A DNA stretch of 40,764 nucleotides from Macrostomum lignano (lineage: Eukaryota). Positions 34,116 through 34,554 of the stretch are shown piece by piece. Made by a program: the position numbers and the translations under genes. Below the pieces are notes generated by a model. The model did no database searches. It had not been told where the DNA came from and saw nothing but the letters and a program-made list of their open reading frames with translations. How positions within the stretch are numbered: the stretch's first letter is position 1; every line of letters starts with the position of its first letter. Where the stretch lies: NCBI GenBank assembly GCA_002269645.1, contig NIVC01001212.1, forward strand, positions 1 to 40,764, given 5' to 3'.

Positions 34116-34295
34116 AATGTTTTCATTAATCAAGAACGAAAGTCAGAGGTTCGAAGACGATCAGATACCGTCCTAGTTCTGACCATAAACGATGCCAACT
34201 GGCGATCCGAGATCGTTTGCTTATTGACCTCTCGGGCAGCCTCCGGGAAACCAAAGTTTTTAGGTTCCGGGGGAAGTATGGTTGCAAAGCTGGAA
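33151..34295 (+). rRNA. 18S rRNA: 18S rRNA, unit 3, 5' portion (interrupted)
   Basis: Starts TATCTGGTTGATCC; stops at GTTGCAAAGCTGGAA. Confidence 0.97.
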
Positions 34296-34554
34296 GCCTT
34301 CGGGCTGCCGCGAGTCCAGCTTACGTGCTTGATGCAGGTACCGATGAGCCTGGCCAATTCGGTCAGTGGTTGAGGTAGAGATTGACGAGTCAAAAACCGC
34401 GAAAATTACAAAAAAATATACTAGTACTCGTTCTGGGAGTGCCAATAAGGCATGCGCAACCATACTTACCGGAAAGTCCAGCCCCACCTGCACGTGGTCC
34501 CCCTGCTCACTCTGAATGATCGGTCCCAGCGATCAGGAGTTATCTAACGGGGCT
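34269..34554 (+). ncRNA. Predicted HDV-like self-cleaving ribozyme spanning the 18S/element junction
   Basis: P2 AGCCCC 34480-85 / GGGGCT 34549-54; P3 ACC/GGT around L3 TGCACGT; P1.1 GC/GC; P4 ACTC..TGATCG-loop-CGATCA..GAGT; J4/2 CTAAC; P1 3' strand CCCCCT 34499-504 can pair with 18S GGGGG 34269-73; folded by hand. Confidence 0.8.

What the first reader, a model, noticed from the sequence alone, without database searches (positions are those of the whole stretch)
34269..34554. HDV-like ribozyme completed by host 18S sequence, with predicted self-cleavage 27 nt upstream of the element
Seen: the full nested double pseudoknot can be drawn by hand (P2, P3, L3, P1.1, P4, J4/2 CTAAC with candidate catalytic C34544). 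L3 is UGCACGU rather than the usual UCCUCGU, and P1.1 covaries (GC/GC in place of CC/GG). The only good partner for the P1 3' strand CCCCCU is 18S GGGGG (34269-73). The adjacent 18S 12-mer AAGTATGGTTGC (34274-85) is the exact reverse complement of element GCAACCATACTT (34456-67). A C(UUCG)G hairpin sits at the junction (34295-34306). Established: R2 elements are released from rRNA co-transcripts by HDV-like ribozymes, often using upstream 28S bases for P1. Inference: this element has rebuilt the same strategy around 18S helix 27, so it would work only when inserted at this site. P1 is short (5 bp plus a mismatch), a weak point unless a homopolymer is miscalled.
Basis: partly seen in the sequence, partly recalled or inferred. 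Interest (0 to 1): 0.8.

Follow-up and report, generated by a model that had tools for sequence, protein, structure and literature searches.

The report
Self-cleaving ribozyme of 18S-inserted retrotransposon
A jumping gene of the R2 family sits inside one 18S ribosomal RNA gene, and its start very probably folds with 27 bases of the host 18S RNA into a known kind of self-cutting RNA (HDV-like ribozyme) that frees it from the ribosomal transcript; this is a good new example of a known trick, not a new kind of system.

Summary
Every string and coordinate in the finding is correct. The window is a eukaryotic rDNA array. Its third 18S gene is split by a 3,778-bp R2-clade non-LTR retrotransposon (34296-38073), in the same orientation, with an A9 tail and a 2-bp target deletion.

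Bases 34480-34554 form a complete HDV-like core: P2, P3, L3, P1', P1.1, P4 and a J4/2 "CUAA". It is the only match to a family-based descriptor in the window. The same descriptor recovers a canonical 28S R2 ribozyme in a distant relative (L001) that Rfam also misses.

P1' (CCCCCU) pairs best with 18S GGGGG 34269-73, so cleavage is predicted 5' of G34269. That leaves 27 nt of 18S on the element RNA, matching the ~28 nt typical of R2.

P1 alone is not unique within the 18S. Specificity probably comes from a split antisense copy of the 18S leader in the 5' UTR, which covers 26 of 31 leader bases (0 of 5,000 shuffles reach this). Its 12-bp helix abuts P1.

I obtained no full-length relative at the same site, so P1 and the clamp lack covariation support. 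Upstream rRNA cleavage, including a predicted structure for hydra R8 (the 18S-inserting element), was published in 2013, so I file this as a new member of a known kind.

The parts
33151..34295 (+). 5' part of the interrupted 18S rRNA gene (third rDNA unit)
   Evidence: Rfam SSU_rRNA_eukarya; 100% identical to the intact 18S of unit 2 up to A34295
34265..34295 (+). 18S 'leader' (helix 27 region), 26 of its 31 bases complementary to the element's 5' UTR
   Evidence: MFE fold; coverage test, 0 of 5000 shuffles; Rfam SSU structure line shows the hairpin whose 3' strand (CUU) is split off by the insertion
34269..34273 (+). P1 5' strand (18S GGGGG); predicted cleavage is immediately 5' of G34269
   Evidence: Best partner of P1' within 370 nt upstream; pairs listed; both registers start at G34269
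34274..34285 (+). 18S strand of the 12-bp clamp helix that closes J1/2, directly abutting P1
   Evidence: Exact reverse complement of 34456-67; in the MFE fold; 0 of 5000 shuffles give a 12-mer
34287..34294 (+). 18S strand of a second 18S:element helix (8 bp with 34315-22)
34296..38073 (+). R2-clade non-LTR retrotransposon, 3778 bp, in the same orientation as the 18S; 2 bp (CT) of the target are lost
   Evidence: Alignment and BLAST against intact 18S copies; RT domain; best match is hydra R8A
34296..34305 (+). GCC-UUCG-GGC hairpin at the very 5' end of the element
34315..34322 (+). Antisense-18S block 1 (TCCAGCTT)
34456..34467 (+). Antisense-18S block 2 (GCAACCATACTT), the element strand of the clamp
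34469..34474 (+). Antisense-18S block 3 (CCGGAA). It pairs with 34265-70 across the cleavage site and overlaps P1 by 2 nt, so it may be a relic or a competing fold
34480..34485 (+). P2 5' strand (AGCCCC)
34486..34488 (+). P3 5' strand (ACC)
34489..34495 (+). L3 (UGCACGU). The conserved U (position 1) and G (position 6) are present; G34490 and C34491 form P1.1
   Evidence: conserved L3 U/G per PMC3774820
34496..34498 (+). P3 3' strand (GGU)
34499..34504 (+). P1 3' strand (CCCCCU); U34504 makes the G.U pair at the cleavage site
34505..34506 (+). P1.1 3' strand (GC), pairing with C34491 and G34490
34509..34540 (+). P4 hairpin (5 bp + GAA bulge + 6 bp, 7-nt loop); contains the ORF start ATG 34516
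   Evidence: ORF list; a stop codon lies directly before the ATG
34541..34548 (+). J4/2 (UAUCUAAC) with candidate catalytic C34544 followed by UAA
   Evidence: the same CUAA occurs in the L001 R2 ribozyme
34549..34554 (+). P2 3' strand (GGGGCU)
34516..37784 (+). Element ORF: three N-terminal zinc fingers, RT, C-terminal CCHC and restriction-like endonuclease region. It is split by one frameshift near 36355-36372 into 34516-36372 and 36375-37784
37785..38073 (+). 3' UTR and A9 tail (38065-38073)
38074..38731 (+). 3' part of the interrupted 18S gene, resuming at TAAAGGAATTGACGG

Best explanation
Shown:
- An R2-clade, 18S-specific retrotransposon lies in the sense orientation inside an 18S gene, so it should be transcribed by RNA polymerase I as part of the pre-rRNA (the co-transcription itself is inferred from the orientation and from R2 biology).
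- Its 5' UTR carries an HDV-like double-pseudoknot core at 34480-34554.
- The substrate strand of that core is not in the element. P1 can be formed with 18S G34269-G34273.

Inferred:
- A 12-bp helix between 18S 34274-85 and element 34456-67, helped by an 8-bp helix (34287-94 with 34315-22), closes the 206-nt J1/2 insert. This places that particular GGGGG next to P1'. Its normal helix-27 partner has been moved 3.8 kb away by the insertion.
- C34544 then catalyses cleavage 5' of G34269.
- The released element RNA starts with 27 nt of 18S.
- After reverse transcription, the complement of those 27 nt can anneal to the upstream target DNA and prime second-strand synthesis, giving precise 5' junctions, as proposed for 28S R2 elements.
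- The ribozyme therefore works only in copies inserted at this 18S site.
For: Setting:
- rDNA array with an interrupted 18S.
- R2-type ORF: RT domain, three N-terminal zinc fingers and a C-terminal CCHC/endonuclease region.
- The best of 35 reference elements is hydra R8A, at 36% identity and 101 bits against 82 for the next.

Core:
- Single descriptor hit in the window, against 0.08 expected from shuffles.
- 1 of 120 chance core strings completes the fold, and the positive control L001 is recovered.
- All pairs verified.

Comparison with the L001 28S R2 ribozyme:
- L3 is UCCACGU with P1.1 GG in L001, against UGCACGU with P1.1 GC here. One P1.1 pair has changed on both sides (C-G to G-C); the other is unchanged.
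- Both share CUAA in J4/2.
- P1' matches the respective rRNA flank in each.

P1 and clamp:
- 34269 is the best P1 partner within 370 nt.
- The 12-mer has p<2e-4, and 26 of 31 leader nt are covered with 0 of 5000 shuffles reaching that.
- In the antisense copy of the leader, the stretch opposite the GGGGG is the main one changed (CCCCC to AC), which leaves G34271-73 without a partner there.

Literature:
- R2 ribozymes cleave 9-36 nt upstream in rRNA, and P1 and P1' lie 23 to over 700 nt apart (PMC3774820).
- P1 is 6-7 bp, with top mismatches in about a quarter of elements, and a 4-nt P1 is active.
- About 28 nt of rRNA is typically retained and primes the second strand (PMC13580325; PMC11331408; 27 nt in R2Bm, PMC6895275).
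- Peripheral domains that bring P1 and P2 together activate large HDV-like ribozymes (PMC4908430, abstract).
Against: - There is no experimental evidence and no covariation for P1 or the clamp. This is the only copy in the window, and no full-length same-site relative was found.
- P1 has only 5 contiguous pairs in the canonical register. Two other 18S sites (34037, 33346) pair equally well.
- Three nucleotides (UAU) separate P4, as drawn, from the candidate catalytic C. In L001 the C follows P4 directly.
- The 6-bp helix 34265-70/34469-74 spans the cleavage site and competes with P1 for G34269 and G34270.
- Rfam gives no HDV-family hit even at E<=10. This is weak evidence, because Rfam also misses the canonical R2 ribozyme in L001.
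- This copy has an ORF frameshift, so it may be dead and its ribozyme may be mutated.
- The descriptor was written after I had seen the candidate.
Confidence: 0.68

Rival explanations
1. The HDV-like core is genuine, but this copy is a decayed, inactive ribozyme. The short P1 with its A-C mismatch reflects mutation in a dead element, and the ancestral element had a 6-7 bp P1 with the same 18S bases.
For: The ORF carries a frameshift near 36355-36372. Horseshoe-crab R2 with one P1 mismatch and sow-bug R2 with L3 changes did not cleave in vitro. A single C34499-to-U difference would give a sixth pair.
Against: There is only one ORF lesion, and it lies in a short homopolymer context that could be a sequencing error. 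The conserved L3 U and G, P1.1, P2, P3 and CUAA are all intact. A 4-nt P1 is active in Nasonia, and top-of-P1 mismatches are common. Register 2 gives six Watson-Crick pairs.
Confidence: 0.15
2. The ribozyme is real, but the 18S-antisense blocks are not a ribozyme clamp. They could be a relic of an inverted duplication of the 18S leader (snap-back or template switch at the RNA 5' end). Alternatively they serve another role, such as keeping the leader double-stranded for 5'-end protection, binding the element protein, or delaying cleavage. In this reading P1 finds its partner without them.
For: The three blocks are colinear with one reverse-complemented 31-nt copy of the leader, interrupted by 133 nt. 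Block 3 pairs across the cleavage site, and sequences flanking HDV ribozymes can raise or lower cleavage. L001 has a 28-nt J1/2 and no clamp.
Against: Without a clamp, a 5-bp P1 cannot distinguish 34269 from 34037 or 33346. The clamp abuts P1 with no spacer. The main gap in the antisense copy lies opposite the P1 strand. Peripheral domains that bring P1 and P2 together are known to activate large HDV-like ribozymes (PMC4908430).
Confidence: 0.12
3. Chance resemblance. The 5' UTR has no self-cleaving activity, and the element RNA is produced in another way, by its own promoter or by ordinary pre-rRNA processing.
For: No Rfam hit. The prediction rests on one sequence. The descriptor gives about 5 hits per Mb in unrelated DNA.
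Against: The expected number of descriptor hits in a 260-nt sense-strand stretch is about 1e-3. The hit lies where R2-clade elements are known to carry this ribozyme. P1.1 pairing is kept by a change on both sides of one pair, and CUAA is shared with a homologous R2 ribozyme. The 18S complementarity is independently significant.
Confidence: 0.05

Closest known systems
R2 HDV-like ribozymes that cleave upstream in 28S rRNA (Eickbush, Burke and Eickbush 2013, PMC3774820); example fetched here: L001
   Same: Both sit in the 5' UTR of an R2-clade element co-transcribed with rRNA. Both have the nested double pseudoknot, with the P1 5' strand supplied by host rRNA. About 27-28 nt of rRNA is retained. 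L3 is U-N-C-A-C-G-U and J4/2 is CUAA in both. A long J1/2 is tolerated in the family (23 to over 700 nt).
   Different: The host strand here is 18S helix 27, not 28S position -28. P1 is 5 contiguous bp instead of 7. One P1.1 pair is G-C where the usual pair is C-G. J1/2 (206 nt) is closed by helices between the rRNA leader and antisense blocks in the element; the text of that paper does not describe such pairing (only loop sizes are given).
R8 of Hydra magnipapillata, the published 18S-specific R2-clade element (Kojima et al. 2006; ribozyme structure listed in Fig. S2A of PMC3774820)
   Same: It is an R2-clade element inserted in 18S rDNA. It is the best protein match of 35 references (36% identity over 150 aa). 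Kojima et al. 2016 place it inside the R2-A clade, whose members have three N-terminal zinc fingers, as this element has. An HDV-like ribozyme with upstream rRNA cleavage is predicted for it, and its 5' junctions show duplications consistent with that.
   Different: Hydra R8 makes a 9-bp target-site duplication (PMC6895275). This element and L041 lose 2 bp. The sister relationship has only 33% NJ bootstrap support on 150 aa. I could not obtain the hydra insertion site or its ribozyme sequence, so identity of site and P1 is untested.
CPEB3 ribozyme (mammalian HDV-like ribozyme)
   Same: From memory, not tested here: its L3 is UUCACGU and its P1' is G/C-rich and ends in U. That is close to UGCACGU and CCCCCU, which suggests the CACGU form of L3 is compatible with activity.
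   Different: CPEB3 is a compact intronic ribozyme with P1 in cis directly upstream, and it has no retrotransposon context. The Rfam CPEB3 model gives no hit here.
Large HDV-like ribozymes with peripheral domains (Webb et al. 2016, PMC4908430)
   Same: A structured insert brings P1 and P2 together and activates the core (abstract). The 12-bp clamp would do the same here.
   Different: In this case one strand of the closing helix is host rRNA rather than ribozyme sequence.

Membership tests
HDV-like self-cleaving ribozyme (R2 type) | Nested double pseudoknot: P1, P1.1, P2, P3 and P4 in the order P1-P2-P3-L3-P3'-P1'-P1.1'-P4-J4/2-P2' | tested here: met
   All helices can be drawn in the correct order with standard pairs
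HDV-like self-cleaving ribozyme (R2 type) | P1 of 6-7 bp that starts with a purine and a G.U pair at the cleavage site | tested here: inconclusive
   G34269.U34504 plus 4 G-C pairs, then an A-C mismatch, then A-U; or 6 Watson-Crick pairs in a shifted register without the G.U. This lies within the published R2 range (top mismatches in about a quarter of elements; a 4-nt P1 is active) but is shorter than typical
HDV-like self-cleaving ribozyme (R2 type) | 3-bp P3 closed by a 7-nt L3 with the conserved U and G, and a 2-bp P1.1 between L3 and the two bases after P1' | tested here: met
   ACC/GGU; UGCACGU; G34490-C34506 and C34491-G34505. Conserved L3 U/G
HDV-like self-cleaving ribozyme (R2 type) | Catalytic C at the start of J4/2, followed by N-A-A and leading into P2' | tested here: met
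   C34544-U-A-A-C, then GGGGCU. Caveat: three nt (UAU) separate P4 as drawn from the C
HDV-like self-cleaving ribozyme (R2 type) | P2 of at least 5 bp; J1/4 of 0-2 nt | tested here: met
   P2 has 6 bp; J1/4 is UC, 2 nt. Ranges
HDV-like self-cleaving ribozyme (R2 type) | Covariation of the helices across homologues | tested here: inconclusive
   Only one homologue (L001) could be compared. P2 differs at all 6 pairs, P3 at 1 pair and P1.1 at 1 pair, and all still pair; P1' tracks the host flank. No same-site homologue with a 5' end was found
HDV-like self-cleaving ribozyme (R2 type) | Mg-dependent self-cleavage giving a 5'-OH and a 2',3'-cyclic phosphate | not testable with these tools
   Needs a transcription/cleavage assay
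HDV-like self-cleaving ribozyme (R2 type) | Match to a curated Rfam HDV-family model | tested here: not met
   No hit at E<=10. The canonical R2 ribozyme in L001 is also missed, so these models do not cover split-P1 R2 ribozymes
R2-clade non-LTR retrotransposon | Single ORF with N-terminal zinc finger(s), RT, and a C-terminal CCHC motif plus restriction-like endonuclease | tested here: met
   ORF translation; RVT_1 split across the frameshift; BLAST to 30 or more R2 references over the region after AF/YADD
R2-clade non-LTR retrotransposon | Sequence-specific insertion in rDNA, sense orientation, precise 3' junction | tested here: met
   Junctions. An independent element (L041) has the identical 3' junction |TAAAGGAATTGACGG
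R8 (18S-specific lineage of hydra) | Phylogenetic grouping with R8Hm | tested here: inconclusive
   Top BLAST hit, but sister in only 66 of 200 NJ bootstraps on 150 aa
R8 (18S-specific lineage of hydra) | 9-bp target-site duplication (as cited in PMC6895275) | tested here: not met
   2-bp deletion (CT), no duplication
R8 (18S-specific lineage of hydra) | Same insertion site in 18S as R8Hm | not tested
   The original paper (Kojima et al. 2006) is not held, and no text gave the site

The most novel reading that the evidence does not exclude
Substrate choice in this ribozyme is made mainly by a guide rather than by P1. The guide is a split antisense copy of the 31-nt 18S leader, carried in the element's 5' UTR, perhaps born from an inverted duplication of the leader. 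It clamps host rRNA (12 + 8 bp) and presents one particular GGGGG to a minimal 5-bp P1. That would make this a bipartite HDV-like ribozyme in which host rRNA supplies both the substrate strand and half of the J1/2 closing helix. It would also show how an R2 lineage re-tooled its ribozyme when it moved from 28S to 18S.
Probability: 0.35. Interest if true: 0.55.

Novelty: new member of a known kind. Interest (0 to 1): 0.42.

Why it matters
R2 elements are the model for site-specific retrotransposition and are now being developed for transgene insertion. In that work the ribozyme's cleavage position and the rRNA leader it leaves behind determine how precisely and efficiently the 5' junction forms.

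Lineages that left the canonical 28S site are rare in the literature. A 2026 review still cites only the hydra and rotifer cases and a few non-specific ones.

This element is a second 18S-specific example, and the metagenomic locus L041 is a third. It shows that the move to a new target came with a matching change in the ribozyme: a new P1' for the new flank, again leaving about 27 nt of rRNA.

If the 18S-antisense clamp is functional, it is a simple and portable way to direct an HDV-like core to a chosen upstream sequence.

Tried and rejected
- Rfam at gathering threshold and at E<=10 gave no ribozyme family. This is uninformative, because the canonical R2 ribozyme in L001 is also missed.
- Four protein searches timed out. 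The one that ran gave only 5 distant hits (at most 37% identity) on short contigs.
  - L001 is a full 28S R2 and served as comparator.
  - L002-L005 lack 5' ends.
- Exact-protein look-ups of the window's ORFs found nothing on record.
- A metagenome scan for 18S junctions at this site gave one true relative, L041, which is 5'-truncated and so has no ribozyme. It also gave several loci with short 18S fragments that end exactly at the site but carry no RT ORF and no HDV-like core.
- A genome-contig scan with the core string returned only chance hits in GC-rich prokaryotes. I used these as a negative control.
- A viral-contig scan for the 3' junction returned nothing.
- Alternative P1 partners inside the element (GGGAG at 34435, AGGTAGA at 34373) were rejected because each has only 3 contiguous pairs.
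- The 28S insertion in unit 2 offers no second ribozyme, because it is 5'-truncated.
- The tree was limited to 150 aa, and the first attempt timed out.
- Kojima et al. 2006 is not held.
- A literature search on U1 snRNA genes in rDNA spacers did not identify the organism.
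Full report
**Context.** The window is a tandem array of eukaryotic rDNA units.
- 18S copies lie at 1-1671 (cut at the window edge) and 18628-20440 (intact). 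A third copy is split into 33151-34295 and 38074-38731.
- Comparison with the intact copies puts the left junction after ...GCAAAGCTGGAA (A34295). The right junction is A9|TAAAGGAATTGACGG (T38074). The two bases CT of the target are missing.
- The 3,778-bp insert is on the same strand as the 18S.
- It encodes an R2-type protein: three N-terminal zinc fingers (C2H2, CCHC, C2H2), reverse transcriptase, and a C-terminal CCHC motif with a restriction-like endonuclease region.
- One frameshift near 36355-36372 splits the ORF.
- I extracted the reference segments from the published alignment of 35 R2 and related elements (supplement of PMC3774820). Over the 150 aa after AYADD, the best match is hydra R8A, the known 18S-inserting lineage, at 36% identity and 101 bits against 82 for the runner-up.
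- A neighbour-joining bootstrap on that short segment makes them sisters in only 66 of 200 replicates.
- The insertion signature also differs. Hydra R8 is reported to make a 9-bp duplication (PMC6895275), whereas this element has a 2-bp deletion.
- I therefore call it an R2-clade, 18S-specific, R8-like element. I do not call it a member of R8.

I tested whether the core could be chance with a descriptor written from family features:
- P2 of at least 5 bp; a 3-bp P3; L3 of the form U-N-C-N-C-G-N; P1' of 6-7 nt.
- A 2-bp P1.1 to L3 positions 2-3; P4 of at least 4 bp; J4/2 of the form C-N-R-A.

Results:
- It hits the 81.5 kb of both strands exactly once, at 34486. Shuffles give 0.08 hits per window.
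Of 120 chance occurrences of the 16-base P3-L3-P1' string in prokaryote genomes, only one completes the fold.
- The expected number in the 260-nt sense-strand 5' UTR of the element is therefore about 1e-3.
- The descriptor was written after I had seen the candidate, which inflates its significance somewhat.
- It does recover an independent positive control, described next.

**A homologous ribozyme for comparison.** The single successful protein search led to L001, a Logan contig carrying a full R2 at the canonical 28S site.
- Its 5' end folds as a textbook R2 ribozyme:
  - P1 is 28S GGGAGUA with element UACUCCU (7 bp, G.U first).
  - P2 is GUCGAU/AUCGAC and P3 is GCC/GGC.
  - L3 is UCCACGU and P1.1 is CC/GG.
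  - The catalytic C is followed by UAA.
- Set side by side, the two cores share the layout, the L3 frame U-N-C-A-C-G-U and CUAA.
- P2 differs at all six pairs and P3 at one pair, yet all still pair.
- In P1.1, the L3 base C has become G and its partner G has become C. The other P1.1 pair is unchanged.
- In each element P1' is complementary to its own host flank: 28S in L001, 18S in the window.
- This is the strongest comparative evidence I could obtain, but it rests on two sequences.
- Rfam finds no HDV-family match in either sequence. The negative Rfam result therefore says nothing about the candidate.

**P1 and the cleavage site.**
- Within the 370 nt upstream of P2, the best partner of UCCCCCU is GGGGGAA at 34269. 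It gives G.U plus four G-C pairs, an A-C mismatch, then A-U.
- A one-base shift gives six Watson-Crick pairs (G34269-C34503 to A34274-U34498), at the cost of the G.U pair and one P3 pair.
- Both registers begin at G34269. Cleavage is therefore predicted between C34268 and G34269, which leaves 27 nt of 18S on the element RNA.
The published survey of R2 ribozymes reports a P1 of 6-7 bp with 1-2 mismatches at the top in about a quarter of elements, and an active Nasonia ribozyme with a 4-nt P1. So this P1 is at the short end of the range but not outside it.
- A 27-nt leader matches the typical ~28 nt of 28S R2 elements and the 27 nt of R2Bm. It starts with the required purine and has a G/C-rich P1, which was found favourable for template function.

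**What gives P1 its specificity.**
- Scanning the whole upstream 18S shows two other sites (34037, 33346) that pair with P1' as well as 34269 does. P1 alone therefore cannot choose its partner.
- The minimum-free-energy fold of 34260-34560 shows that the 18S leader is almost entirely paired to the element:
  - 34287-94 with 34315-22 (8 bp);
  - 34265-70 with 34469-74 (6 bp).
- In all, 26 of the last 31 bases of 18S are covered by exact antisense blocks. No shuffle of 5,000 reaches this, and none gives a 12-mer.
- The three blocks are colinear with a single reverse-complemented copy of the leader, interrupted by 133 nt.
- The main departure of that copy from perfect complementarity lies opposite the GGGGG (CCCCC has become AC), which leaves G34271-73 without a partner there.
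- The 12-bp helix starts at the base next to P1 and ends 12 nt before P2. It is therefore well placed to close the 206-nt J1/2 insert and to bring P1 and P2 together. Peripheral domains that do this are known to activate large HDV-like ribozymes (PMC4908430).
- The Rfam SSU alignment shows that in native 18S, three G's of this run (G34270-72 in the cmscan alignment) pair with the CUU at the insertion site, as part of the GCAA-capped hairpin I know as helix 27.
- The insertion removes that partner to the far side of the element, which frees the G's.
- The 6-bp block spans the cleavage site and competes with P1 for two G's. It may be a relic or a regulatory alternative fold.
- The text of the 2013 paper gives only the sizes of J1/2 loops. 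As far as I could check, such rRNA:element clamping has not been described.

**Most likely mechanism.**
- Shown:
  - the element's family, orientation and junctions;
  - the core fold and its agreement with the R2 consensus;
  - the 18S complementarity.
- Inferred:
  - RNA polymerase I co-transcription;
  - folding of the leader onto the 5' UTR;
  - P1 formation with G34269-73;
  - cleavage by C34544;
  - use of the 27-nt leader's cDNA complement to anneal upstream of the nick and prime second-strand synthesis, as argued for 28S R2.
- A consequence is that only copies inserted at this 18S site are processed.
- The ORF start (ATG 34516, directly after a stop codon) lies in P4, inside the ribozyme.

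**Relatives at the same site.**
- A metagenome scan for 18S junctions at this position found L041. It is a 5'-truncated R2-clade element, 31% identical to this one, with the same 3' junction |TAAAGGAATTGACGG and the same loss of CT.
- The site is therefore used by at least two divergent lineages. L041 lacks its 5' end, so it cannot test the ribozyme.
- Other hits carry 28-48-nt 18S fragments that end exactly at the site. They lie in non-18S contexts and have no RT ORF and no HDV-like core. I record them as unexplained.

**Comparison with what is known, and novelty.**
- HDV-like ribozymes at R2 5' ends, cleavage 9-36 nt upstream in rRNA, and host bases forming P1 were all established in 2010-2013 (PMC3774820).
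- That paper also lists a structure for hydra R8. It reports hydra 5' junctions with duplications of upstream rRNA consistent with upstream cleavage.
- [quoted passage not shown] is therefore a new member of a known kind.
- Three things are new here:
  - the host lineage, which has a 2-bp deletion rather than a 9-bp duplication;
  - the P1.1 pair changed on both sides;
  - the split antisense leader, if it proves functional.
- A 2026 review still counts only a few R2 lineages that changed target within rDNA. The element itself is therefore a useful addition.

**Verdict.**
- It is not experimentally or phylogenetically proven.
- Interest is moderate.

Noticed in passing
window 24181-26959: The 28S gene of the second rDNA unit carries a 2.8-kb, 5'-truncated R2 element at the canonical R2 site (...CTCTTAAG|...CTTCAAAAA|TAGCCAAATGCC) with a 784-aa RT ORF (24339-26693). 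This array therefore hosts both a 28S-specific and an 18S-specific R2-clade element.
   Followed up: partly
window 8363-8525 and 29924-30086: A complete U1 snRNA gene (Rfam 151.7 bits) lies on the + strand in the intergenic spacer of each rDNA unit. This linkage is unusual and might help identify the organism.
   Followed up: partly
window 36355-36372: A single frameshift splits the RT-coding ORF of the 18S element (...FGFSRVK* in one frame, ...FPSEISVVKDLY in the next) in a stretch with short G, T and C runs. It is either a dead copy or a sequencing error.
   Followed up: partly
L041 (ERZ887849 contig, reverse strand) 36-2246: An independent R2-clade element, 31% identical and 5'-truncated within the RT. 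It is inserted at exactly the same 18S position, with the same 3' junction and the same loss of CT.
   Followed up: yes
L060, L068, L070, L095, L067/L069 (metagenome contigs): Short 18S fragments (about 28-48 nt, from ...TTTTGGxTTCCGGGGGAAG to ...GCTGAAA) end exactly at this insertion site but lie outside 18S genes. They occur as tandem subrepeats upstream of an 18S gene (L095, L069), as dispersed copies about 190 nt apart (L060), or next to histone genes (L070). No RT ORF or HDV-like core follows them. Their origin is unexplained; they might be traces of 18S-leader-carrying element RNAs.
   Followed up: partly
L001 1-170 (Logan SRR29492076): A full-length 28S R2 with a textbook HDV-like ribozyme, predicted to leave 22 nt of 28S on its RNA (the canonical GGGAGUA P1 strand). 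Rfam detects nothing there even at E<=1, so Rfam's HDV-family models do not detect either R2 ribozyme examined here, both of which take their P1 5' strand from host rRNA.
   Followed up: yes
window 5411-9014 vs 26960-30592: The 3' part of 28S plus the start of the intergenic spacer is only 95% identical between units 1 and 2, while the rRNA genes are over 99% identical. This points to spacer heterogeneity within the array.
   Followed up: no
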